Below, one piece after another: positions 23,413-61,830 of a DNA stretch of 64,000 bases. Every line of letters starts with the position of its first letter. Position 1 is the stretch's first letter. The notes under the pieces were generated by a model, which was not told the DNA's origin, did not search any database, and saw nothing but the letters and a program-made list of their open reading frames with translations. The DNA lies in the IMG/VR virus record IMGVR_UViG_3300028829_003504, positions 62,001-126,000 of that record; one strand, given 5' to 3'. Both the position numbers and the translations under genes were made by a program.

Positions 23413-26070
23413 ATGGCACTTAACTTAGAACTATCAAGTTCGAATGAAAAGTCAGTACTATACGATGGTGAGTACGGAGATTTAGACTACATAGAAAGCT
23501 CCTTAACTTTATATTTTAGTGTAGAAGGAACTAGCTCGTATTCTGTTACGATTATCGATGCGGATACAGGAAACGACCAGACGTCTATCGTACAAGTCGG
23601 TCAGGGAACACTAACCATAGACCTTCGTATTCTAAAAAGTTATTTCACAATAGGTACTACCGTATTCGGTGGTACTGTTGTGTTACAGATAGACGATAAT
23701 GATAGTACTGATACTGGTCAGTTTAACATCGACTTCCATTTCGCCGTTACAAATAACGCAGTATACGTGGCTCCAGTGACATTCGGCCTCAGTACAAACG
23801 GTATTGCCATTAGTACTGAGTTACAGCGCAGTAGTGGTATTGATTTCGTTGAGCGCGCCGCGTATCCTACGGTAGAAGTACTTGGAGGCTCAGGTCCTTT
23901 CGAGTACACTTGGGTTCCTGCAAACTTTGAACACTTCTTAATAGAATCAGTAGAAGGTCTTGATACAGACAAACCTACCGTAAACTATAAACTCGATGTT
24001 GCGTCGGACCTACCTGAAGAACTATTTAATTCCGATGGAGGCAAGTGGACTCAGACAGGTATATTTAACGTAAGCGTTCGAGATACCAGTAACGGTGATA
24101 TCTCGTTAGGAGAAGTATCCTGGAGCTTCACTGTTAGTGTACAGGAGGAGGAAAGAGGCGACTCGGTAGTTAAAGAAAGCAGAATCATACCAGGACGATT
24201 TAGAGTACGAAACCCTCTCAATAGCTTCTGGTATGACTTATGTTATTATGAAATGTACGTCTTTGATAAAGATTACCTACAGTGGATTAGACTATTCCCT
24301 AATAAGGTGTTTGTGCGCGATGGAGGCAGCAGTGATTGGATTGAAATAGGTTGCATTACTGATACTTCCTATGACGACCCTTGTGCAGGCTTCGGGTCAG
24401 GTACCGATTGTTCAGGTGAACCTCAAGATCCTCTTGCGGGATCTGGTGATGGATTTGGTTCTAATGGTCCTTCATACGATGTCGATACAGGATATCCTGC
24501 AGGCTTTGATATGCCTGACAGCTCACTCGGTGGCTACGGTATTAAGATTGCACCTAAAGCCACTGGTTACGATACTCCGGTAGGTTACATAATGCAGCGT
24601 CCCGGACTACAGTCGGAAGAATCTTATGATCCTACAGGTCTATCTGCCGATGAAGGCGCTCACGGTAAGTATAATAGTCCTAACTTAAATGGAGCCAGCA
24701 CTTGGGGTAGAGGTGCAGCGGTTACTGAGACTATATATGAATTACCTGCACAGAATGGTTATTACGAACTTCTCTATGCTGCTTACGATTCCGTTAGTAT
24801 CGATGTTTACTACGTAGGTCAGCGAGTAGCTACAACATGTGGACCTGTGCCTAAGTTGACGCGAGGTCTATTGACGTTTAATGTTAACATAGCGACAGGT
24901 CTAGGTGAAAGACGTATCATGATTAGGGTACGTGGTGCCGAGGATGTTAGATGGGCTTACCAAGTAGTAGGTCCTAAAGCTTCACCTGTGCTACAAGATT
25001 TCGATAACCAAGACGATGATGATTACGCAAATATCAATGAGTTTCTTTACGAAGAATCTGAAATGATGCAAACCCAGTACATAGGTACGCCTATGTTTCC
25101 TGCACCCTGTCACGGCACTGTAGGTAATGTAGATCAGACGTTTCCTTGGGCATTATCTGATAGAATTGAGACGCAAAACTGGTTTGAGTACTATCACTAT
25201 GTCGGCGAAAACGGGGGTCCAATGGTGCTCGATTTTAGCTCATGGGCAGCCGCTGACTACGTTGAAATCTGGCAAAATGGGGTTCGGATAGCTACATCTC
25301 AAGATTATAACCAAACTCCAGGCTATGTTGATTTTATATATGAAGCCCGTGAAGGCGTTCAAGATATAATGGTTAGAGTGCATACAGAATCAAAAGGTAT
25401 GGGTCAAGATTTAAGTACTTGGTACTATACACTATTCTGCCCTAACGCAATTGGCCACAGAAGACAACCATGGCCTTGTGGGCCTGACGTTATATACAGC
25501 ATGGGACATCCTGCCACAGAGGATAACTTTGATATAGATAACGGCGTCGAGCGTGGTGCCTTTAAAGTATACATGCGAGAGTGTACGGCTACTACATTAG
25601 TTAGAGTATTCAATAGAGACGGAGACTTGATAACGTCGATGACGGGCGAAGGTGACTTCGATGTAGAGGCTTTCAATTTCGATGTGGTTACAGGAGAAGT
25701 ACATAAGGATATATATGTACGTGTTGAGACTTCTATAGGGCATGGTTGGCAATACACCGTAAGTTGTCCAGTACCTTTACTTGATATAATACTAAAACCT
25801 GTAGACCCAAGTGTAGAGTGGTCTATAACCGATGAAATTATACAGGACGATTCTGAGTATGTCGAACTTATCGTAAGCATAAACAAAGCCCAATTGGTTG
25901 ATAGGTCTATTGATTGGGCTACTAGCAACGACACTGCGTATGACCTAACGGACTACTGTGCTGCTAACGGAACTGTGACAATACCTGCTGGACAGACTAG
26001 TATTAAGATTCAAATTAATTTAGCTCCTTGTGATGCTGAGGATGAGGATGAGGATGCACCTAGCACCTGA
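23413..26070 (+). CDS. acidic virion/fibre protein with repeated beta-sandwich domains and an incomplete C-terminal Calx-beta domain
   Basis: Three units ending W.Y.V/L.(C/G)P. The C-terminus IDWATSNDTA..LTDY....GTVTIPAGQTSIKIQI stops before the last Calx-beta strands. Confidence 0.75.
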   Translation: MALNLELSSSNEKSVLYDGEYGDLDYIESSLTLYFSVEGTSSYSVTIIDADTGNDQTSIVQVGQGTLTIDLRILKSYFTIGTTVFGGTVVLQIDDNDSTDTGQFNIDFHFAVTNNAVYVAPVTFGLSTNGIAISTELQRSSGIDFVERAAYPTVEVLGGSGPFEYTWVPANFEHFLIESVEGLDTDKPTVNYKLDVASDLPEELFNSDGGKWTQTGIFNVSVRDTSNGDISLGEVSWSFTVSVQEEERGDSVVKESRIIPGRFRVRNPLNSFWYDLCYYEMYVFDKDYLQWIRLFPNKVFVRDGGSSDWIEIGCITDTSYDDPCAGFGSGTDCSGEPQDPLAGSGDGFGSNGPSYDVDTGYPAGFDMPDSSLGGYGIKIAPKATGYDTPVGYIMQRPGLQSEESYDPTGLSADEGAHGKYNSPNLNGASTWGRGAAVTETIYELPAQNGYYELLYAAYDSVSIDVYYVGQRVATTCGPVPKLTRGLLTFNVNIATGLGERRIMIRVRGAEDVRWAYQVVGPKASPVLQDFDNQDDDDYANINEFLYEESEMMQTQYIGTPMFPAPCHGTVGNVDQTFPWALSDRIETQNWFEYYHYVGENGGPMVLDFSSWAAADYVEIWQNGVRIATSQDYNQTPGYVDFIYEAREGVQDIMVRVHTESKGMGQDLSTWYYTLFCPNAIGHRRQPWPCGPDVIYSMGHPATEDNFDIDNGVERGAFKVYMRECTATTLVRVFNRDGDLITSMTGEGDFDVEAFNFDVVTGEVHKDIYVRVETSIGHGWQYTVSCPVPLLDIILKPVDPSVEWSITDEIIQDDSEYVELIVSINKAQLVDRSIDWATSNDTAYDLTDYCAANGTVTIPAGQTSIKIQINLAPCDAEDEDEDAPST

Positions 26071-26226
26071 TACTTTCCTAGCTACTATACGTAAAGCTTT
26101 TGAATCTGTAATACCATTTATGTGATTTGATAACCATACAGTCATAAAGTATTAGGGAGTAAGGAGTTAGTAGACCTTGCAGGTAAGTCAGGTAAATGGT
26201 GGCAAGTACTTAATTAAGGAATTATA

Positions 26227-28020
26227 ATGGCAAAACGATTTCATGTTGACTTAGCGAATCCTAGTTTCGGAGTCATAGAAAAAGGTAAAGGAATTGTAAC
26301 GATTCTGGAGGTAGCTGAACCTTTACCTCCAGAGCGGCCTGAACCCGAACTAGTAAATGAATACATCTGGGAATGTATATTTGAAAACTTAGATGGTGAT
26401 GAGGTGAAGTCTGTACCTCATAATAGCGAAGAAGGCTACGAGTATATGATAGCCCATATAGATCTAGAAGGTGATAACGAGATTACTTGGAGCCACGTAG
26501 CTAGATTTATAGGGGACAATCCCACAGGTACACCTATGGCGCAGAATATAGATAGTGGTGTAGGCGTGAGTGACAATTTTGGTATATTTATAGATACGTC
26601 CAACGGTAGTTCTATAATAATTAAAATTATGCGTAGACCTCTACCTGTAGCTGCCGACGAAGACAGCAGAGTAACAGGAAATGAGTTCGTCCGTGTTAGC
26701 GGAAATGACTTAAGCTACCAGTGGGATTTAAACTACGAATACTACATAACCTGTACTTATGGCACACTATCTAACTATACAGGAACTATAATTACCGATG
26801 AAGTATCCTACGGCTATTCGAGCATAGATAAATCAACTGCTTGGATAGCAAACATCGATCAGGATAGGAAGAAGTGGGTAGGGTTTGGACATAAATCATC
26901 AGAGCCTGGTAATAAATCTTATCGTACAGTAGTTACAAAGAGATGTGACTTACACAGCGTATGGCGCAGGCCTTGGTCGGCATCTAGCCTTCCAGCTAGT
27001 GAGTTTGCCAATGAGCATAAACGTGTTAAGAATAACATGGATAGTCCTTCTACTACTTTAACGTTCGACTGGAAAGATAACAAAGAATACCTCGTCATGA
27101 TGGCGGATACTTCTTCTGACAACGAGGTAGCTTGCGCTAAAGTGTATACTACTCCTGGTCTGTTAGAAGTACCAGGCGTAACTAGACATAAATCAGGTAT
27201 TGCTGCACCTGGTGGTAACCCATCATGGATAGAATTCCTACAGACCAGCGTAGGCGGTAGTAAAAAGATAGAGGCGCACCACGGATATATATTAAATATA
27301 CTCGAAAGAGATATGTTCTATGACCCTGGGACGTGCGGCGCTGAAGGTTTCGTAGGTCCTGTTAGCTCTATTTCATCTTTAGCTAGTATTAACACAATAG
27401 GTAAAATCGCGTTTATGTCTGACACCCCAGGTATTACAAAATACGGGGCTTCGGCTACAGACGGTTCAGCTTTGGAAGTTGAGGCTTATATAGGGGACTG
27501 GACAGGCAATGTACCCGATGTATACAATGATAAGTATACTAGCGATATTCAAGGTATAGCGATACCTTATAGTTACGGTGGGGGTATCGCTAGTAACATG
27601 ACGCCTTCCGATCCGTATCTAGCCGAGTCAAAATCTACGGCTTGGAGAGGCTGGTACCTATCCGTCATAGACGAAACTGAACACACTTCTGGTATTAAGT
27701 ACAGTAAGATAACGAGTATCGATATTAACAAGTACGTAGATGGCCACACTTTAGTAATAAGGTGTGAGGACTCTGCTGATGGTGATTATACGCTTGAGAG
27801 TAATTCCTCGATAGTGGACAACAACACAGGACGCTCCGTTAGCCTTAGTGATATCTACGGAATCAGAACTAAAGCATTACACATAGGATTTCAAGATACC
27901 TTAGCAAGAAATCAGTCAGGAATGGATGCTGAGGTTACTATTGCTATTGAATTTGAATTTCATGATGGTACGATGTTTTCACATACATTGACTCTTGCCG
28001 CTAATAGTGAAATATATTAA
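26227..28020 (+). CDS. virion/fibre protein whose N-terminus matches the terminal strands of a Calx-beta domain
   Basis: AAGGA RBS; starts MAKRFHVDLANPSFGVIEKGKGIVTILE, followed by a Pro-rich linker. Confidence 0.75.
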   Translation: MAKRFHVDLANPSFGVIEKGKGIVTILEVAEPLPPERPEPELVNEYIWECIFENLDGDEVKSVPHNSEEGYEYMIAHIDLEGDNEITWSHVARFIGDNPTGTPMAQNIDSGVGVSDNFGIFIDTSNGSSIIIKIMRRPLPVAADEDSRVTGNEFVRVSGNDLSYQWDLNYEYYITCTYGTLSNYTGTIITDEVSYGYSSIDKSTAWIANIDQDRKKWVGFGHKSSEPGNKSYRTVVTKRCDLHSVWRRPWSASSLPASEFANEHKRVKNNMDSPSTTLTFDWKDNKEYLVMMADTSSDNEVACAKVYTTPGLLEVPGVTRHKSGIAAPGGNPSWIEFLQTSVGGSKKIEAHHGYILNILERDMFYDPGTCGAEGFVGPVSSISSLASINTIGKIAFMSDTPGITKYGASATDGSALEVEAYIGDWTGNVPDVYNDKYTSDIQGIAIPYSYGGGIASNMTPSDPYLAESKSTAWRGWYLSVIDETEHTSGIKYSKITSIDINKYVDGHTLVIRCEDSADGDYTLESNSSIVDNNTGRSVSLSDIYGIRTKALHIGFQDTLARNQSGMDAEVTIAIEFEFHDGTMFSHTLTLAANSEIY

Positions 28021-28030
28021 GGAGATTACT

Positions 28031-28585
28031 TTGCCTACTGTTCAAAAACATTGGCTAGTTAACGAATTGGACATTAATACTTATGACGGAAGTTATCAAG
28101 TAGAAGGTGTCCCTTACGTTAAGAACCAAAGCTGTGGCTTTATCATTAAACCTAATTGGGGACTTAGTGTTGACGTAGTTAGCGGTAAGACTATCTTGGG
28201 TCCTAAAAAAGGTAACTTAATGTTAGCTATAATACCGGATAGTACATTACATAAGTCCGAGTGGCTAGAAGGCCAGACGTCAGGTGTTATCGACATAGGG
28301 CGTTTTCATTACGAAGATAGCCAAAGCTACGACTTCACTATTGTATCCAAAAGGGAATCAGGTAAAGGAATAGTCGTACCTCCAGTAGGGACGCATAGCT
28401 TTAAGCAAGATGTATATTCATGGCTTAAATCCCCAGATGCTGCGGTATTTTCTTTCGAAATACATTTGGTAATTGATGACACAACGGATTATATACAAGA
28501 GTTCACTCCGTTATTAGTTAATTTAATAAAAACTCAGAAGTCCAGCAATATAGGCTTCCACGCCGAAGACAAAATAGAGGTATAG
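28031..28585 (+). CDS. hypothetical virion-associated protein
   Basis: TTG start after an AAGGAG RBS (the track begins at 27995, same frame). Confidence 0.65.
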   Translation: MPTVQKHWLVNELDINTYDGSYQVEGVPYVKNQSCGFIIKPNWGLSVDVVSGKTILGPKKGNLMLAIIPDSTLHKSEWLEGQTSGVIDIGRFHYEDSQSYDFTIVSKRESGKGIVVPPVGTHSFKQDVYSWLKSPDAAVFSFEIHLVIDDTTDYIQEFTPLLVNLIKTQKSSNIGFHAEDKIEV

Positions 28586-28587
28586 TA

Positions 28588-30975
28588 ATGGCTACTACCA
28601 ACTTTGCACCTCTGCTTACAGTGGGTGATGAATACGACTTGTCACCTTTTAGTGGCAGAAACATGGTAATACATGCCCAACGCAATAACACAGGATATAC
28701 GTATACATTCAGCATTGACATACTGACTGGTTTTGATCAAGATCGTTACTACGGTCTTATTGTACCTTCGGGACATGGAGAGATACCTCAATCCAATCCT
28801 AATCAGTTGTTTAAAATCACAGCCGATGCTAAGCTTGTACCTCTTAACTATAGTGATGGTCTTGCAGCACAGATTAGCTACCTTACAGGTGATGATGCAG
28901 GAACTCCAGATATCAATGTACATTGGGGATCAGTAGCCCAGCTTACGGTTATCTCAAGTACTGCAAATGAGGGAACTGAGGCGCTACTTAGAATATACAG
29001 GGATGGTGATACTTCGGGTGCGGTTGATATTAATATTGGTTTTATTCCGGGGACCGCGGACTTAGATGATGTACAGTCTATACCTCCATCTGTTACTATG
29101 CAGTCGGGCTTCTCGTTTGTGGATGTACCTATTACTATTAAGACTGACCTTGATTACGAAGGGGACCAGTCATTTTTATTAAGTGCCCAAATAGCAAATG
29201 CGCCTAATGGGGAGGAATGGACAGGTAGTAACTACAGGCAGTTGGTTATTGTAGATACAACTCCTGAATTTCCTGTAGATGTACCCGGTTGTATGGACGT
29301 TACCGCTAACAACTATAACGATGAGGCTACGATCGACAATGGCAGTTGTACCTATGACCCTGTAGTTGTACCAGGCTGTACTGACCCTCTAGCCAACAAC
29401 TATGATCCACTGGCTACTTCGAACAACGGCAGCTGTACATACGACCCAGTGGTGGTATACGGATGTACTGACCCTTCGGCAAGCAACTATAACCCACTAG
29501 CTACAGATAATGACAATTCCTGTGTCTATCCGCCTCCTGTAGTGGACTGTCTAGTCGTAGGAGACTTACTGGAAGTAGAACATTGGTTTAAAGTTTGGTT
29601 TATAGAGCCTGTTGACGGAGAACAGCTACACGACCAAGATTTAATTCAGTATAAGTGGAGCGGTGACTGGGTAACTGACCCTCGTATAGACCTATTCGAT
29701 TACTCGGAGAAAAATCGTGTAGCGATGTTCAAATTCACCAACACTATGTCTTCATCTGATAGTGACGTAGATGTAGACTACGAGGTAACAGCTTGGGCTA
29801 AAGATTTAAGGTTCATTACGTTAGATGTTACTGACGAAGATAGTGCCAATGTAAGCTTCTCTATGCCTTGTGTTATTGCAGGTAATACCCCAAGCTTTAG
29901 CGTAGGCGACATTACAGTTACGGAACCTAGTAGCGGTACCCTAAAAGCATCTGTTTATATAACGGCAAGCGAAGCCGTAACGGGTGGATCTATTACAATC
30001 GATTACTGTTCGAGTGATATAACCGCTACGTCATCTAGTGCCTCTGTAGATGGAGACAGAGATTACGAGCCTGCCTGCGGTACGGTTACTTTTGAAGTAG
30101 GTGAAAGCTCTAAACAAATAGATGTAACTATAAATACTGATAATCTGTACGAACCTTCCGAGACATTAAAGATGACCATATCTAATGTCAGTCGGGGCAG
30201 TATATCAGACTCGGTAGGTACTATAGAGATACAAGAATGGATTGTTCCTACAGTATCAGTTACTCTGGCGTCACAGGGAGCTACGAAAGAATTGTTTGTG
30301 GGTCGCGATACTTCCGGATCGACGGATGCGGTTGAGGTGACAGTAAACGGAAATGTCGAATCAAGACGTTTCTTGATGGAACAGGTCCTCAAGGACTATG
30401 ACATAGCTATATGTGATGAACCCGTTGAGACTGGTCACGGTAATGACGGATGTTCAGACAATTCTAATCCCCTGTCCCACTATAAAGGTGTTGCGGGTGC
30501 TACTAGTAATTTGACTGTCAACTATATAAATAGCATACAACCTCTTCTTGATTCAGGTACTCAGGAGATTAGTATCCTAGTAATGAATGATAGCTCCGAT
30601 GCAATATCCCATGATAACTCTGTATGGGATAACGAGTGGGCTTGGCTAGGAGCTTTAGGTATCCCTGTTACTCTGACCTTCATACGCGTAATAGGGCAGA
30701 CTCATATAGATAACGGTACAGGTAACTATGAATTGGCTCGCATCTGGTTTGAAGAAATCGTTGCTGCTGCACCAGGTAATGTAACGGCTTACTTTAAATC
30801 CTATAGCTCCTACACAACAGGCGCAGCCAGTGACCTAAATGATATACTAAGCAGTACAGTCAATAATGACTATGCGGCAACATGTAACGCCCGACCCGAT
30901 GACGTTATAATAGTAACAGCACCGGACGAAGACTCAGCCTTATCCTTAGCACAGGGAGCCATAACATGTCCTTAG
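28588..30975 (+). CDS. adhesin-like fibre protein: Calx-beta, 3x Cys repeat, Calx-beta, vWA-like domain
   Basis: Two Calx-beta motifs, GC(T/M)D..A.NY...AT..N.SC.Y repeats and the MIDAS-like DTSGS at 30307. Confidence 0.75.
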   Translation: MATTNFAPLLTVGDEYDLSPFSGRNMVIHAQRNNTGYTYTFSIDILTGFDQDRYYGLIVPSGHGEIPQSNPNQLFKITADAKLVPLNYSDGLAAQISYLTGDDAGTPDINVHWGSVAQLTVISSTANEGTEALLRIYRDGDTSGAVDINIGFIPGTADLDDVQSIPPSVTMQSGFSFVDVPITIKTDLDYEGDQSFLLSAQIANAPNGEEWTGSNYRQLVIVDTTPEFPVDVPGCMDVTANNYNDEATIDNGSCTYDPVVVPGCTDPLANNYDPLATSNNGSCTYDPVVVYGCTDPSASNYNPLATDNDNSCVYPPPVVDCLVVGDLLEVEHWFKVWFIEPVDGEQLHDQDLIQYKWSGDWVTDPRIDLFDYSEKNRVAMFKFTNTMSSSDSDVDVDYEVTAWAKDLRFITLDVTDEDSANVSFSMPCVIAGNTPSFSVGDITVTEPSSGTLKASVYITASEAVTGGSITIDYCSSDITATSSSASVDGDRDYEPACGTVTFEVGESSKQIDVTINTDNLYEPSETLKMTISNVSRGSISDSVGTIEIQEWIVPTVSVTLASQGATKELFVGRDTSGSTDAVEVTVNGNVESRRFLMEQVLKDYDIAICDEPVETGHGNDGCSDNSNPLSHYKGVAGATSNLTVNYINSIQPLLDSGTQEISILVMNDSSDAISHDNSVWDNEWAWLGALGIPVTLTFIRVIGQTHIDNGTGNYELARIWFEEIVAAAPGNVTAYFKSYSSYTTGAASDLNDILSSTVNNDYAATCNARPDDVIIVTAPDEDSALSLAQGAITCP
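29287..29529 (+). repeat. three tandem 29-aa (87-nt period) GCTD..A.NY...AT..N.SC.Y repeats
   Basis: Units start at 29287, 29374 and 29461, each with two Cys. Confidence 0.9.
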
Positions 30976-58269: not shown

Positions 58270-61200
58270 CTACCTTTGTTTATTACCAAGGGACTTACTA
58301 GTACCTATTAAGCTCCTAGTATTATTCATCTTACCTGTAGATCCCTTAGACCCGTAAGAGGCTACTCCTAGTGCGGCTTTACTCTTACTACTTACTACTG
58401 AACCTTTTAAAATATCTATAAAATCTGGGTTAGTTAATCCCCACATACACAACACAGATGCTCTCCATATATCATCAGTAAGGTCATCCCCTTTAATGAC
58501 GGTCTTACCTGCATCCTGTACAGTCAACATTTGTAAGATAAAATGCTCTACTGGCATCCTTTCAAAACACATAGGGTATTCATCATGAGTACTTAAGGCT
58601 AAGATATCATCAAACTCTTGCTTAACGTGAGGTCTAGGTATAAGTATTTGTTGTTGTTGCATCCTGGTTTTAAAATCAACGAAGTCACTATACTTAAGGC
58701 TATACTGTTTCCACAAGTCAATATCCGTACTAATTTCAGCATCTTGCAGTAGCTTTATACTGTTCCATCTATCGGCTAATAGTATCTTTACATTTCGAGC
58801 CTCTATAAGAGGTATCATAATGTTTTCATATATCTTAGGATAATGTAGAGGTATGCTAGGTAATGGATTTATTTCAACGACAATATCAAGTACAGGTATT
58901 ACAACTTCTTCACCATTAACCTCTACTTTCTGCAAGCTGCCTATACTCAAGGCAAAACAGTTATTACTGTAGCCGGCATCGACTGCCATAACGGACTTGC
59001 CTTCGCAGGACTTAACTTTATCTACATAGCCCCATCGATACTTAGCTCCGTCTTTTGCTTTGTATATCTTGTAAGTGACGTTTGCAAAATTACGACCAGT
59101 CTTCTTTATAATACCTTTAACCAGTTCTTCCGACGTAATGAATGGGTTACTAGATAGTGGGGGTTGAGCTCCATAATCCCGCATCGCGGTACCGTGATCT
59201 TTTCGGAATTCATCGTCTAAATCGGCGCGCGTTACGTCGGGGTTCATTTCCCAAGTAGGCTTATGTAGACCTAGTAGTTTTTTACTGCCGTGTGACTGCC
59301 TGATTAATTCACATATCTTATCACGTTGCGAACTAGGTGAACTGATATTCATAAAGTAACCTGTTAAGGCTTCATCGTATTCGGAGGCTAACTGCCTGCG
59401 CTCACTGTTACGTACGGTACGTAACGAACGCTCAAGTGCAATGTAAACTTCCGAGCCGTTAATCTTAACCTTGCTGCTGTTCTTGTCATTGTCGAACCAG
59501 CCGATTTCATCAACCGAATTTGACACAAGCATGCCGCTTGCTTGGTATGCGTGTTCCGGAATGTTGACAGTCATATCATAGGTCTTAACCTTGATCTTAC
59601 TAGGTTTAACATATTCTATTTCTGAGGTAAATAAATCAAACTCCTTAGTAGGTTCGTAGTAGTCCTCATACATACTTTGCCCATCGGTGTCATAAGCAGT
59701 ACTATTGCGCCTAAAATCAAAACCTATGTGACTAACAAATATACGACTGAACTCTCGGCTCATATCAAGTCTATATAGAAAAACTTTCCTGTCACCGTAT
59801 TTATAATCAACCTTATGCCAATCACCCTTACTTCCGTATTTAGTTTTCTTAAAACTAGATGCTATCCTAAGTCTAAGCAAAAGTTGTTGGATCTGCTTTA
59901 TAAGCTCTTTACTTGTTGATCGGTAGTAAACAGTTTTTCGGCTAAGGAAGCCTCCATCACAATCGAACGCAGATCTAATGTAGGACATCGCACAGGATTC
60001 AGGTGCCTGTAAAATACTCCAAGGTACCTGCTTATATGCACTGTAGTCCGAAGTGCATCCTATTTTCTGTAAGAACTCTATAATAGGTCTGTGACTTATG
60101 GAGGCTCGATATACTTTCTTACCAAGACGTTTAGTTTGCAAATGTCTTGGAGCGATACCAAATGTCCGCACCACTTTATCACAGTAATCATTATACTTAT
60201 CTAAGTTAGTTGTATCGAATCTATATCCACGTTGACCTTTATCTTGCACATTACCGTCAGCAGTTAGATAACCTAAGATGCTTGCTAGGTCATCTGTCAT
60301 ACACTCAGGCAAAACAACATTTAGCCCATCGTGGGAACTATCAAGTATTAAGTCTGAAAGATTAAACTTGTCCGTGATATTGTAGTAACAACGTTCCATG
60401 CCCGTGTACATGACGCCTTTACGGTAGTGCCGTTCGATCATACCGCTACGTCTAAGTTGAGTCATTACCTTAGTAAGGGCTTTCGACCCGTTAGAGGCTT
60501 CTTTAATTTCTTTACGCGTAAAGTTTACAAGCTTAGCCATAGCAGCATAAACTATCTGCTTGCTAGATGATTGGGTTGGTTGCACCACAGTAAATTTCAA
60601 TTCGCGGCTAAACTCAGCACCTGTCGATATAACTACTCTATCAGTCTCTAGTAGATTCTTTAACTTAACTTTCTTGAACTTATTGTTACGGTAAACACAA
60701 ATCTTATGTTCAGGTGTAGCCTTTAACTCCTGTCCAGATTTAAGTTTGAGTCCCCATATTTCTTTTGTTCCCGTGCAGACATGTTTAGTTATCTCGCCGT
60801 AACTAGCTCCTACGTTTGTCCAACACCAACCTTCTTTAATCTTATCCATTCTAATAAGACCTTCACTAGTGCTTATCAGTTGATCTCCAGGTATACAACC
60901 AAATATACGTGTTCTACCACGAAGCGTTCGTTTATCAGGTCCTGCAGGATATACCATAAGACTACGGTGTCTGTAAAGTACGAATGTATCTTTTAACTTA
61001 AATATTTCATGGCCATACTTCTGCTCATAACGTCTAAGCAGTGCATGATATTTTTGAAACCAAGGGCTTTCACACAGGTACTGATAATATGGTTCCCATA
61101 AAGTATCTTTAGCCTGAGCATAGGTTAGAGCTACGAAAGTTCCGTGGAATACGGTGTTTGATTTAACCCTAAATAGCTGGGTGGGTTTTTGAGCTTTGAG

Positions 61201-61830
61201 TATACGGTGGGTAAGATAAGTACTTAACATTGCGACGAGGGCGGACTTACCAGAACGCTGTCCTGCGTTAACTGCGAGTTCATTGTAGAAGTTTAGTTCT
61301 TCGTCACGCATCATGTGAGAACGTCTAGCCTGGCACTTAGGACAAACACCATACTCTAACAGTACTACTCTGCGTTCGAATTCTACTAATCCGTCTTGAG
61401 GGTCGTGACCCCCATCATCCATCCACTCAAGGTCAGAACATCGGGCGCAATACTCTGAGAAAAGCTTAACGCCAATGAGTGCTTGCTCTAGGTACGGAGG
61501 CATATCTGAACCGAGGAATTCCTCGTTCGTGCACCAATCGTAATAGTTCTTTGCTTGGGACATGGAGCTATCGTCGATTTTTAAATCTCTAGGAACTATG
61601 TCCTTAGAATCGACTACTTCTGATATAACAGCGAAGAGGTCTCTCTCCTCGTTTGCATATTGCTTAGCAAGATCACTAGGTTCCCCTATCATAGCCATGT
61701 CTGTATTATTCGCTGAGACCTCTAAATCAGTCTCCTCGTCAGTCAGGCCTATAAGATCAGAAATCCCTGAAACTAGTCCAGGGTTTTTGTTTCTGACTGC
61801 AACAGGGGATGATCTCTTCTTACGAGCCAT
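58270..61830 (-). CDS. terL: terminase large subunit containing an intein
   Basis: Walker A AGQRSGKS, ALTYAQA, spliced Walker B RTRIFG|SVDEIGW, coupling ISSP and RNase H-like AVDAG...DDI nuclease motifs; N-terminal CxxC pairs. Confidence 0.9.
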   Translation of the reverse strand: MARKKRSSPVAVRNKNPGLVSGISDLIGLTDEETDLEVSANNTDMAMIGEPSDLAKQYANEERDLFAVISEVVDSKDIVPRDLKIDDSSMSQAKNYYDWCTNEEFLGSDMPPYLEQALIGVKLFSEYCARCSDLEWMDDGGHDPQDGLVEFERRVVLLEYGVCPKCQARRSHMMRDEELNFYNELAVNAGQRSGKSALVAMLSTYLTHRILKAQKPTQLFRVKSNTVFHGTFVALTYAQAKDTLWEPYYQYLCESPWFQKYHALLRRYEQKYGHEIFKLKDTFVLYRHRSLMVYPAGPDKRTLRGRTRIFGCIPGDQLISTSEGLIRMDKIKEGWCWTNVGASYGEITKHVCTGTKEIWGLKLKSGQELKATPEHKICVYRNNKFKKVKLKNLLETDRVVISTGAEFSRELKFTVVQPTQSSSKQIVYAAMAKLVNFTRKEIKEASNGSKALTKVMTQLRRSGMIERHYRKGVMYTGMERCYYNITDKFNLSDLILDSSHDGLNVVLPECMTDDLASILGYLTADGNVQDKGQRGYRFDTTNLDKYNDYCDKVVRTFGIAPRHLQTKRLGKKVYRASISHRPIIEFLQKIGCTSDYSAYKQVPWSILQAPESCAMSYIRSAFDCDGGFLSRKTVYYRSTSKELIKQIQQLLLRLRIASSFKKTKYGSKGDWHKVDYKYGDRKVFLYRLDMSREFSRIFVSHIGFDFRRNSTAYDTDGQSMYEDYYEPTKEFDLFTSEIEYVKPSKIKVKTYDMTVNIPEHAYQASGMLVSNSVDEIGWFDNDKNSSKVKINGSEVYIALERSLRTVRNSERRQLASEYDEALTGYFMNISSPSSQRDKICELIRQSHGSKKLLGLHKPTWEMNPDVTRADLDDEFRKDHGTAMRDYGAQPPLSSNPFITSEELVKGIIKKTGRNFANVTYKIYKAKDGAKYRWGYVDKVKSCEGKSVMAVDAGYSNNCFALSIGSLQKVEVNGEEVVIPVLDIVVEINPLPSIPLHYPKIYENIMIPLIEARNVKILLADRWNSIKLLQDAEISTDIDLWKQYSLKYSDFVDFKTRMQQQQILIPRPHVKQEFDDILALSTHDEYPMCFERMPVEHFILQMLTVQDAGKTVIKGDDLTDDIWRASVLCMWGLTNPDFIDILKGSVVSSKSKAALGVASYGSKGSTGKMNNTRSLIGTSKSLGNKQR
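59518..60897 (-). mobile_element. intein (460 aa) with LAGLIDADG homing endonuclease
   Basis: Starts CIPGDQLISTSEG; block B ATPEHK; LAGLIDADG-like LGYLTADG and SAFDCDG; ends TYDMTV...HAYQASGMLVSN, with +1 Ser. Confidence 0.92.

What the first reader, a model, noticed from the sequence alone, without database searches (positions are those of the whole stretch)
25810..26310. Calx-beta domain split across two separately translated genes (possible donor-strand complementation)
Seen: ORF 23413 ends in a Calx-beta domain truncated after ...GTVTIPAGQTSIKIQINLAPCDAEDE. The missing end appears at the N-terminus of the next ORF: KRFHVDLANPSFGVIEKGKGIVTILE aligns with ETLKMTISNVSRGSISDSVGTIEIQE of the intact Calx-beta in ORF 28588. 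The two ORFs are in the same frame and 156 nt apart. The spacer has several in-frame stops and ORF2 has its own AAGGA RBS. Inference: the second protein may plug into the first by supplying the final beta-strands, a pilus-like non-covalent joint. It could instead be a recent gene fission caused by an insertion.
Basis: partly seen in the sequence, partly recalled or inferred. Interest (0 to 1): 0.72.

Follow-up and report, generated by a model that had tools for sequence, protein, structure and literature searches.

The report
Calx-beta domain split between two phage genes
Two neighbouring tail-fibre genes of an uncultured marine jumbo phage each encode part of one small beta-sandwich (Calx-beta) domain, and the evidence indicates that the second protein plugs its first 30 residues into the first protein to finish the fold, an old, conserved plug-and-socket joint rather than a broken gene.

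Summary
ORF1 (23413-26070) ends in Calx-beta strands A-E, matching positions 5-85 of a 111-position Calx-beta profile I built. ORF2 (26227-28020) starts with the missing F-G hairpin, profile 87-109.

- **Sequence fit.** Adding the ORF2 head raises the score from about 44 to 59.6 bits (200 shuffled heads: maximum 50.1). An ORF2 profile search of 1.84 billion proteins hit 13 tandem Calx-beta proteins through its head alone. All 86 full-length head matches start at profile positions 86-88.
- **Not a recent fission.** Eight related marine phage loci keep separate genes, each with its own start. No fused relative was found.
- **Complementary pattern.** In four loci where the upstream Calx-beta keeps F-G in cis, the ORF2-like protein has no head.
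- **Structure predictions.** ORF2 residues 1-39 are disordered alone. The complex prediction scores ipSAE 0.78 (best control 0.02; mark reached by 58 of 80 solved complexes and 2 of 110 mismatched pairs).
- **The 156-nt spacer.** It is window-specific and marks where the nearest relatives carry an Ig-like plus intein-like extension of ORF1, which this phage lost.

All evidence is computational; binding is predicted, not shown.

The parts
23413..26070 (+). ORF1, 885 aa: a structural (fibre/baseplate module) protein, core family phrog_26008. It carries the acceptor ('socket') domain at its C-terminus.
   Evidence: It sits in a module of collagen-like and Calx-beta proteins next to tail genes.
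25807..26052 (+). Incomplete Calx-beta domain of ORF1 (residues about 799-880): strands A-E plus the acidic E-F loop. Strands F and G are missing.
   Evidence: The local Calx-beta HMM matches profile positions 5-85 of 111 at 39-46 bits. Pfam PF03160 matches profile 24-87 of 119 below threshold. The signatures TSNDTAYDLTDY and IPAGQTSIKIQINLAPCDAEDE are read directly.
26032..26067 (+). Window-specific acidic tail DAEDEDEDAPST, partly encoded by (GAGGAT)x3 at 26041-26058.
   Evidence: DNA homology with L004 and L008 stops just after the LAPC codons. L003 stops exactly at LAPC.
26071..26226 (.). 156-nt non-coding spacer with five in-frame stops and GC 0.33. It occupies the place where the nearest relatives have about 1 kb coding for an Ig/PKD-like domain plus a BIL domain.
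   Evidence: No Rfam match. RNA fold z-score is -0.55. No copy elsewhere in the 83-kb record. No significant similarity to the relatives' extension. No enriched k-mers. No promoter or terminator signal above shuffles.
26216..26220 (+). Shine-Dalgarno AAGGA of ORF2, 6 nt before the ATG.
   Evidence: An AAGGA/AGGAA motif also precedes the ORF2 start in L003 and L004.
26227..26316 (+). ORF2 head, residues 1-30: the donor beta-hairpin, Calx-beta strands F (RFHVDLANPS) and G (GIVTILE).
   Evidence: It matches Calx-beta profile 87-109. It has pLDDT below 50 and no secondary structure in the monomer model. All 30 residues lie in the predicted interface. It is 85-89% identical to the heads of L004 and L008, against 46-55% for the rest of the protein.
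26311..26355 (+). Pro-rich linker (VAEPLPPERPEPELV) between the head and the body of ORF2.
26227..28020 (+). ORF2, 597 aa: an all-beta multidomain protein, probably the distal part of the fibre. It matches no known family.
   Evidence: No Pfam or PHROG match. AF2 model has mean pLDDT 65. No meaningful fold match.

Best explanation
ORF1 and ORF2 are two separately translated structural proteins of a marine jumbo phage that share one Calx-beta beta-sandwich.

ORF1 ends with strands A-E of the domain, the 'socket'. The first 28-30 residues of ORF2 form the missing F-G hairpin, the 'plug', and are unfolded on their own. During virion assembly the hairpin inserts into ORF1's open sandwich, with F pairing with C and G with A/A'. 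This completes the hydrophobic core and locks ORF2 onto ORF1 non-covalently. ORF2 hangs from the hairpin by a Pro-rich linker.

The arrangement is ancestral for a clade of at least eight phage genomes; it is not a recent break. What is particular to this window is a secondary loss of an accessory C-terminal module of ORF1 that its closest relatives carry after the LAPC motif (Pro-rich linker, Ig/PKD-like domain, and in some an intein-like BIL domain). That loss left a short acidic tail and a 156-nt non-coding spacer.

Shown: the sequence complementarity, the conservation and the phyletic pattern. Predicted: the binding geometry. Inferred: the role as a fibre joint and the loss scenario.
For: 1. 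**Exact complement on the profile.** ORF1 covers Calx-beta profile 5-85 and the ORF2 head covers 87-109. The chimera scores 59.6 bits, against a maximum of 50.1 for 200 shuffled heads.
2. **Unbiased search.** A search of 1.84 billion representatives with the ORF2 family profile hit 13 tandem Calx-beta proteins via the head only. All 86 full-length head matches start at profile 86-88.
3. **ORF2 alone.** Residues 1-39 have pLDDT below 50 and no secondary structure, and they do not pack on ORF2's own body.
4. **Complex of ORF1 690-885 with ORF2 1-45.** ipSAE was 0.77-0.78 in three runs, with a best control of 0.02. That mark was reached by 58 of 80 solved complexes and 2 of 110 mismatched pairs; these counts hold only roughly because my own alignments were used. 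The pLDDT of ORF1 rises from 70-73 to 80-82 with the true partner.
5. **Interface pattern.** There are continuous contacts with ORF1 799-814 (strand A) and 830-844 (strand C). There are alternate-residue contacts with 817/819/821/824/827 (B) and 866/868/870 (E). This is what insertion of F-G into an ABE / A'GFC sandwich would give.
6. **Conserved boundary.** Eight loci (window, L003, L004, L006, L008, L009, L012, L013) have ORF1's Calx-beta cut after LAPC and a separate ORF2 starting with the head. The genes overlap by 1-4 nt or lie 2-13 nt apart in relatives.
7. **No fusion found.** All full-length ORF2 relatives start at residues 1-4 of their protein.
8. **Complementary pattern.** In four loci whose upstream ORF1-like protein keeps F-G in cis (profile reaching 108-110), the ORF2-like protein starts directly with the body, without head or linker.
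9. **One-to-one pair.** The 83-kb record holds exactly one truncated Calx-beta and one head.
10. **Loss scenario.** The window is sister to long-form P0001 (support 98/99) inside a clade whose outgroups are long, so the short form is derived.
Against: - There is no experimental evidence. The complex score is a model's confidence, and a Calx-beta domain is a fold the model knows, so it may simply reassemble a familiar domain.
- Pfam itself does not reach its threshold for ORF1's part, and it gives nothing for the 45-residue head alone.
- Six of the eight head-bearing genomes have an in-frame extension of ORF1 that begins with two conserved strands. Those strands might complete the domain in cis.
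- The AF2 model with VIA-align places those strands in the extension's own Ig-like domain: Calx-like matches end at fragment residue 101-108, and Ig/PKD matches span 109-276. But those Z-scores are only 4.2-4.5, and the Calx-beta part of that model has pLDDT 45-70.
- The phyletic pattern (8 against 4) probably reflects a single evolutionary transition.
- Headless ORF2 relatives show that the body can be used without the plug.
Confidence: 0.7

Rival explanations
1. Recent gene fission or pseudogene. A once-continuous ORF1-ORF2 gene was broken in this phage by insertion of the 156-nt spacer, or by an assembly error, and one or both halves are defective.
For: The two ORFs are in the same frame. 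The spacer is unusually long for this tightly packed module, AT-rich and specific to the window.
Against: - The ORF1|ORF2 boundary, with ORF2's own start codon (and, where the upstream sequence was read, in L003 and L004, its own Shine-Dalgarno), exists in seven other genomes. ORF1 identity in these falls to about 39%.
- No fused relative appears among 1.84 billion representatives.
- In L003 ORF1 stops exactly at LAPC, with only 11 nt before ORF2.
- Identical sequence occurs in a second IMG/VR contig and in Logan contigs.
Confidence: 0.04
2. One polypeptide after all. The spacer is removed or skipped by an intron, translational bypassing or read-through, so that a complete Calx-beta domain is made in cis.
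For: The genes share a frame. The phage does carry a self-splicing protein element elsewhere, an intein in TerL.
Against: - Besides ORF1's own TGA, the spacer holds five more in-frame stops.
- No Rfam family matches, and the RNA fold z-score is -0.55.
- 156 nt is shorter than group I or II introns (general knowledge).
- No matching take-off and landing codons are apparent by eye after the last in-frame stop at 26215-26217.
- Relatives have intergenic gaps of 13 nt or less (or overlapping genes) and the same separate start.
- In six relatives ORF1 continues past LAPC into an Ig-like extension (plus a BIL domain in four) before its stop.
Confidence: 0.02
3. The resemblance is real but vestigial. 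ORF2's head derives from Calx-beta strands but now does something else, such as binding another partner or acting as a flexible arm. ORF1's truncated domain is stabilised otherwise, or is a tolerated remnant of the lost extension.
For: - In six of eight genomes ORF1 has its own strands right after LAPC that could fill the gap in cis.
- The window's short form is derived.
- Headless ORF2 relatives exist.
- hhalign finds no similarity between the cis strands and the ORF2 head, so the two are not interchangeable copies.
Against: - The head is the best-conserved part of ORF2: 85-89% against 46-55% identity.
- It still matches the Calx-beta F-G consensus better than the cis strands do.
- It is disordered alone and docks confidently and specifically.
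- The short form arose twice with the same 5' end point, in the window and in L003.
- The model of the long form keeps the cis strands in a separate Ig-like domain.
Confidence: 0.2

Closest known systems
Donor-strand complementation/exchange in chaperone-usher pili (Fim, Pap, Caf1) and strand exchange in type V pili
   Same: An Ig-like beta-sandwich is encoded incomplete. The missing C-terminal strand is supplied by an N-terminal extension of the next protein, and that extension is disordered by itself. The result is a very stable non-covalent joint in an extracellular fibre.
   Different: - Two strands (the F-G hairpin) are donated instead of one.
- The fold is Calx-beta, not a pilin.
- There is one socket and one plug, so this is a heterodimeric joint, not a polymer.
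- No chaperone or usher is involved, and assembly would be cytoplasmic in a phage.
- This comparison is recalled from general knowledge. No sequence relation was found or expected.
Calx-beta domains (PF03160) of Na/Ca exchangers, integrin beta4 and large bacterial or marine adhesins
   Same: The sequence signatures and profile match are shared. Neighbouring genes of the same phage have complete copies (ORF 28588, ORF 18988).
   Different: In known members the seven strands lie in one chain. Here profile positions 5-85 and 87-109 lie in two gene products.
Engineered split Ig-like domains (SpyTag/SpyCatcher from CnaB2, and similar tag/catcher pairs)
   Same: A short C-terminal strand segment of an Ig-like domain, given as a separate peptide, reconstitutes the fold with the truncated remainder. 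The pair is used as a modular connector.
   Different: Those pairs are man-made and become covalent through an isopeptide bond. This one is natural, uses a hairpin, and shows no sign of covalent chemistry.
Conserved N-terminal adaptor modules of phage tail fibre and tailspike proteins (e.g. T4 gp36/gp37, branched tailspike systems of CBA120- and G7C-like phages)
   Same: A conserved N-terminal attachment element is followed by a more variable distal part. The genes are adjacent in the fibre module.
   Different: Known adaptors are autonomous folded domains that dock surface to surface. Here the adaptor is a fragment of the partner's own domain.
Bacterial intein-like (BIL) / Hint domains
   Same: Relatives' ORF1 proteins end in a BIL fold (2lwy, Z 19.1, rmsd 1.5 over 132 residues) with Cys1 and a C-terminal His-Asn.
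   Different: It is absent from the window's ORF1. It is relevant only to the history of the spacer.

Membership tests
Calx-beta domain (Pfam PF03160) | Match to the family profile above the curated threshold | tested here: inconclusive
   ORF1 alone scores 14.1-17.6 bits against a cut-off of 27. The ORF2 head alone gives no hit. Pfam could not be run on the two pieces together. A local HMM built from bona fide domains gives 43.6 bits for ORF1's part and 59.6 bits for ORF1 + X + ORF2 head, covering profile 5-109 of 111.
Calx-beta domain (Pfam PF03160) | Signature motifs: T-x-DGTA-x-x-G-x-DY loop, F-x-PG-x-T strand, acidic DDxxxE loop, E-x-F-x-V-x-L-x-NP strand F, final strand G | tested here: met
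   Read from the sequence against the reference alignment. ORF1 has TSNDTAYDLTDY, TIPAGQT and CDAEDEDED. ORF2 has RFHVDLANPS and GIVTILE.
Calx-beta domain (Pfam PF03160) | All seven strands in one polypeptide | tested here: not met
   ORF1 stops at profile position 85. Strands F-G are encoded 156 nt downstream in a separate ORF behind five further in-frame stops.
Donor-strand complementation joints (chaperone-usher pilus type) | Acceptor Ig-like domain lacking its C-terminal strand(s) | tested here: met
   Two strands are missing rather than one.
Donor-strand complementation joints (chaperone-usher pilus type) | Donor is an N-terminal extension of another subunit, unstructured alone, that completes the acceptor fold | tested here: met
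   Met by prediction only. ORF2 residues 1-39 have pLDDT below 50. The complex ipSAE is 0.78 against a best control of 0.02, a mark reached by 58 of 80 solved complexes and 2 of 110 mismatched pairs.
Donor-strand complementation joints (chaperone-usher pilus type) | Each subunit is both donor and acceptor, giving head-to-tail polymerisation | tested here: not met
   There is one truncated Calx-beta and one head in the 83-kb record. ORF2 shows no truncated acceptor domain that I could recognise.
Donor-strand complementation joints (chaperone-usher pilus type) | Dedicated periplasmic chaperone and outer-membrane usher | not tested
   The window's proteins were not all scanned. These components are not expected for a phage virion.
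Bacterial intein-like / Hint domain at the ORF1 C-terminus | Hint fold with an N-terminal Cys and C-terminal His-Asn | tested here: not met
   It is absent from the window: ORF1 ends at residue 885, 12 residues after LAPC. It is present in relatives P0001, P0002, P0004-P0007.

The most novel reading that the evidence does not exclude
A natural, genetically encoded split beta-sandwich serves as a universal plug-and-socket connector in phage fibres. The two-strand hairpin at the start of ORF2 completes ORF1's Calx-beta domain in all members of the clade.

In the long forms ORF1's own chain leaves the same face of the domain into an Ig-like plus intein-like branch. The joint would then be a branching point carrying one cis tip and one trans tip, and tips could be gained, lost or exchanged without touching the socket. 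The window phage would be the pared-down version.

This would be the first hairpin-type donor-strand joint described in a virus, and a ready-made natural analogue of tag/catcher connectors.
Probability: 0.45. Interest if true: 0.75.

Novelty: new variant of a known kind. Interest (0 to 1): 0.62.

Why it matters
Fold complementation between subunits is textbook for bacterial pili. I found no report of it as the joint between phage tail-fibre proteins in the searchable literature.

If confirmed, three things would follow:

- It would add a new way in which phages bolt a variable distal protein onto a conserved proximal one.
- It would explain why gene callers and domain databases see only sub-threshold 'broken' Calx-beta domains in these fibres.
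- It would offer a small natural hairpin/socket pair for protein engineering.

It also gives a clean example of a domain whose last two strands sit in one gene in some phages and in the next gene in others.

Tried and rejected
- **Spacer as a mobile element or repeat.** No second copy in the 83-kb record and no enriched k-mers.
- **Spacer as an RNA element or intron.** No Rfam hit and no fold better than shuffles.
- **Spacer as a decayed remnant of the relatives' extension or BIL.** DNA and three-frame protein comparisons were not above shuffles. The best case was a 46-nt match to L008's BIL region, score 25 against a shuffle maximum of 24. This is unproven either way.
- **Promoter or terminator in the spacer.** Nothing above the shuffle expectation.
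- **Close DNA relatives among cultured phages.** None.
- **Protein relatives among cultured phages.** Alexandravirus, Dickeya and Salmonella jumbo phages keep the synteny. Their ORF1 C-terminus is a different domain, and the next gene encodes an ILEI-domain protein, so they say nothing about the split.
- **Viral-contig scans with ORF2.** They found only the same phage.
- **Homology between the relatives' cis strands and the ORF2 head.** hhalign was not significant. Only the C-terminal 26 residues of the extension and of ORF2 align (E 6.8e-5, probability 63%).
- **Fold search with the ORF2 model.** No meaningful match.
- **Coordinates of the models.** These are not available to scripts. Strand packing in the long-form model could only be judged indirectly, from the aligned ranges of fold matches.

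Full report
**Context**

The window is part of an IMG/VR virus record of 82,973 b, estimated 32% complete. An identical 13.8-kb stretch lies on a 261,788-b viral contig, so this is an uncultured jumbo phage. The runs that hold it are marine metagenomes.

The finding sits in a tightly packed plus-strand structural module:
- a tail protein;
- a protein with a weak, sub-threshold match to the T7 tail-fibre N-terminal domain;
- several collagen-like proteins;
- proteins with complete Calx-beta domains (ORF 18988, ORF 28588).

Portal and terminase genes lie further on.

**Checking the observation**

The ORFs, their termini, the shared frame, the 156-nt spacer with five in-frame stops and the AAGGA 6 nt before the ATG are all as described.

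Pfam sees only a sub-threshold Calx-beta match in ORF1: profile 24-87 of 119, at 17.6 bits against a cut-off of 27. It sees nothing in the 45-residue head alone.

I therefore built a Calx-beta HMM of 111 positions from nine bona fide domains. These came from both domains of ORF 28588 and from domains of two unrelated multi-Calx-beta proteins.

| Query | Score (bits) | Profile positions |
|---|---|---|
| ORF1 795-873 | 43.6 | 5-75 |
| ORF1 with its acidic tail | 39-46 | 5-85 |
| ORF2 head alone | 4.0 | 87-109 |
| ORF1 tail + X + ORF2 2-32 | 59.6 | 5-109 |
| 200 chimeras with shuffled head | mean 44.1, sd 1.1, max 50.1 | - |

An independent and unbiased test came from the profile search of 1.84 billion representative proteins with the ORF2 family alignment. 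Besides true ORF2 relatives, it returned 13 large tandem Calx-beta proteins that match only profile positions 4-39, the head, in 3-11 stretches each. Locally, all 86 full-length head matches in these proteins start at Calx-beta profile positions 86-88, and 84 of them end 0-4 residues after the end of the domain match (the other two 8 and 12 residues after).

ORF1 therefore covers positions 5-85 and the ORF2 head covers 87 to the end. This is an exact complement without overlap.

**Is it an artefact or a recent break?**

It is neither. The same sequence is found on a second IMG/VR contig and in Logan's contigs of two runs, with no variant or joint. All may come from one sample.

More important is the comparison with relatives, obtained through protein searches and contig look-ups.

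| Locus | ORF1 form after LAPC | Gap before ORF2 |
|---|---|---|
| Window | short: 12-residue acidic tail | 156 nt |
| L003 | short: stops exactly at LAPC | 11 nt |
| L004 | extension + BIL | 9 nt |
| L008 | extension + BIL | 2 nt |
| L006 | extension + BIL | overlapping stop/start |
| L009 | extension + BIL | overlapping stop/start |
| L012 | extension without BIL | overlapping stop/start |
| L013 | extension without BIL | 13 nt |

- In all eight loci ORF1's Calx-beta is cut after the conserved LAPC motif.
- In all eight a separate downstream gene starts with the head, consensus M-A-K-R-F-x-V-x-L-x-x-P-S-x-G-x-I-x-K-x-x-G-x-V-T-I.
- All full-length ORF2 relatives in the big search start at residues 1-4 of their protein. 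No fused ORF1-ORF2 protein was found.
- The head is the most conserved part of ORF2: 89% and 85% identity to L004 and L008, against 55% and 46% for the rest.

**What the relatives carry where the window has its spacer**

In six of the eight loci ORF1 continues in frame after LAPC. The continuation is a short, often Pro-rich linker and a domain of about 150-200 residues. In four loci a Gly-rich linker and a C-terminal domain follow.

That C-terminal domain is a bacterial intein-like (BIL/Hint) fold:
- Foldseek E 1.1e-7 and VIA-align Z 19.1 to 2lwy;
- Pfam PT-HINT at E about 1e-3;
- Cys1 and a terminal His-Asn read directly.

In the ORF1 tree the window is sister to the long-form P0001 (support 98/99). 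It sits inside a clade whose outgroups are long, and L003 is the other short form. The short form is therefore most simply derived, arising twice, by loss of the extension.

DNA homology between the window and L004/L008 stops just after the LAPC codons and resumes at ORF2's Shine-Dalgarno sequence. The 165 nt in between has no significant similarity to the lost region, no RNA family, no structure, no repeat and no promoter or terminator signal. I read the spacer as debris or filler left by that loss. This is an inference.

**Does the extension complete the domain in cis in the long forms?**

This matters for how general the trans joint is.

The AF2 model of the P0001 tail (mean pLDDT 71) has two strands right after LAPC. 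Fold matches divide the model as follows:
- Calx-like matches, including CALX-CBD1 (3ead), end between fragment residues 101 and 108 (3ead covers 32-107).
- PKD/FN3/Ig-like matches cover residues 109-276.
- The BIL fold covers residues 279-431.

In that model the strands therefore belong to the extension's own Ig-like domain, and the Calx-beta part stays incomplete with low confidence (pLDDT 45-70). The Z-scores are only 4.2-4.5, so this is suggestive, not firm.

It does fit two other facts. The ORF2 head is strongly conserved in the long-form genomes too. In L012 and L013 a Pro-rich linker follows LAPC directly.

**Complementary phyletic pattern**

A sister group of loci (L014, L016, L017, L018) has ORF2-like proteins that begin directly with the body (profile position 46 onward), without head or linker. 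In all four, the upstream ORF1-like protein has a Calx-beta domain whose C-terminal half reaches profile positions 108-110, so F-G are present in cis.

The count is eight loci with a truncated domain plus a head, four with a cis-complete domain and no head, and none mixed. The two groups are probably one clade each, so this counts as about one evolutionary transition rather than twelve independent observations.

**Structure predictions**

- **ORF2 alone** (six-sequence alignment). Residues 1-39 have pLDDT below 50 and no secondary structure. The head does not pack on ORF2's own body.
- **Complex of ORF1 690-885 with ORF2 1-45.** ipSAE was 0.77-0.78 in three runs, against a best control of 0.02. 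That mark was reached by 58 of 80 solved complexes and 2 of 110 mismatched pairs. The counts hold only roughly here because my own alignments were used.
- **Effect on ORF1.** The pLDDT of the ORF1 fragment is 80-82 with the true partner and 70-72 with unrelated partners.
- **Interface.** All of ORF2 1-30 is in it. On ORF1 the contacts are continuous along 799-814 (strand A) and 830-844 (strand C). They are alternate-residue along 817-827 (B) and 866-870 (E).

The model may of course be reassembling a fold it knows. The result supports binding but does not show it.

**Mechanism proposed**

ORF1's C-terminal domain cannot close its hydrophobic core by itself, because half of one sheet is missing. 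The unfolded head of ORF2 inserts as a hairpin and completes it.

By the up-and-down topology of the fold, the end of strand E, the start of F and the end of G all lie on the same face, opposite the domain's N-terminus. ORF2's body therefore continues the fibre outward through its Pro-rich linker. In the long forms, ORF1's own extension would leave from the same face and make a branch. This last point is inference.

The 83-kb record holds exactly one socket and one plug. The joint is a one-to-one connector, not a polymerising system.

**Comparison with what is known**

The closest principle is donor-strand complementation in chaperone-usher and type V pili. It differs in four ways: a hairpin is donated instead of a single strand, the fold is Calx-beta, there is no polymer, and there is no chaperone or usher.

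Engineered tag/catcher pairs made from split CnaB domains are the closest functional analogy. Phage fibre adaptors known so far are autonomous domains.

Full-text searches combining donor-strand or strand complementation with phage, tail fibre or baseplate, and Calx-beta with bacteriophage tail, gave no relevant paper. The library is incomplete, so this is weak evidence of novelty.

**Verdict**

- The fission-by-insertion alternative is rejected, and so is a single-chain product.
- I rate it a new variant of a known kind, with moderate to high interest. It needs a simple binding and folding experiment.

Noticed in passing
window 58270-61830 (-): The large terminase subunit is 1185 aa. It is interrupted by an intein with a LAGLIDADG homing endonuclease at about residues 344-770 (Pfam Intein_splicing and LAGLIDADG_3; PHROG terminase match in three stretches).
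   Followed up: partly
window 28588-30975 (+), residues about 430-550; relatives L003, L004, L006, L008, L009, L012, L013: The second Calx-beta domain of this protein is contiguous in the window. In all seven relatives checked the same domain is interrupted between profile positions about 50 and 51 by a 240-300-residue insert, a nested-domain architecture. The window phage thus lacks two accessory modules that most relatives have (this insert in all seven, the ORF1 extension in six).
   Followed up: partly
L004 8620-9627, and the equivalents in L006, L008, L009: Relatives' ORF1 proteins end in an Ig/PKD-like domain followed by a Gly linker and a bacterial intein-like (BIL) domain, with Cys1 and a terminal His-Asn followed by Val/Ile/Lys. 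The domain may therefore cleave rather than splice (not tested). The 26 residues before the Gly linker resemble ORF2's C-terminal 26 residues (hhalign E 6.8e-5). One headless ORF2-like protein (P0026, L016) also appears, from its C-terminal sequence, to end in a BIL-like domain.
   Followed up: partly
window 29350-29610 (+), ORF 28588 residues about 255-340: Three tandem repeats of about 29 residues containing Cys (GC-x-D-x-x-A-x-NY-x-x-x-AT-x-DNGSC-x-Y), separated by DPVVV linkers. No family was assigned.
   Followed up: no
window 26041-26058: The perfect hexanucleotide repeat (GAGGAT)x3 encodes the EDEDED part of ORF1's window-specific tail. It is a possible slippage-prone tract right at the deletion boundary.
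   Followed up: no
window 27995-28585 (+): The ORF after ORF2 needs a TTG start that overlaps ORF2's end by 26 nt. The corresponding genes in L004 and L008 are 162-163 aa and start 77-96 nt after ORF2, so the real start here may be further downstream.
   Followed up: no
L010 (Erwinia phage phB78, Alexandravirus) and L011 (Salmonella phage Sen-NF): Cultured enterobacterial jumbo phages keep the gene order: a collagen-like fibre protein, then an ORF1 homologue, then a large distal protein. Their ORF1 C-terminus is a different domain, and the next gene encodes a roughly 950-aa 'ILEI domain' protein. The socket/plug joint is therefore specific to the marine clade.
   Followed up: partly
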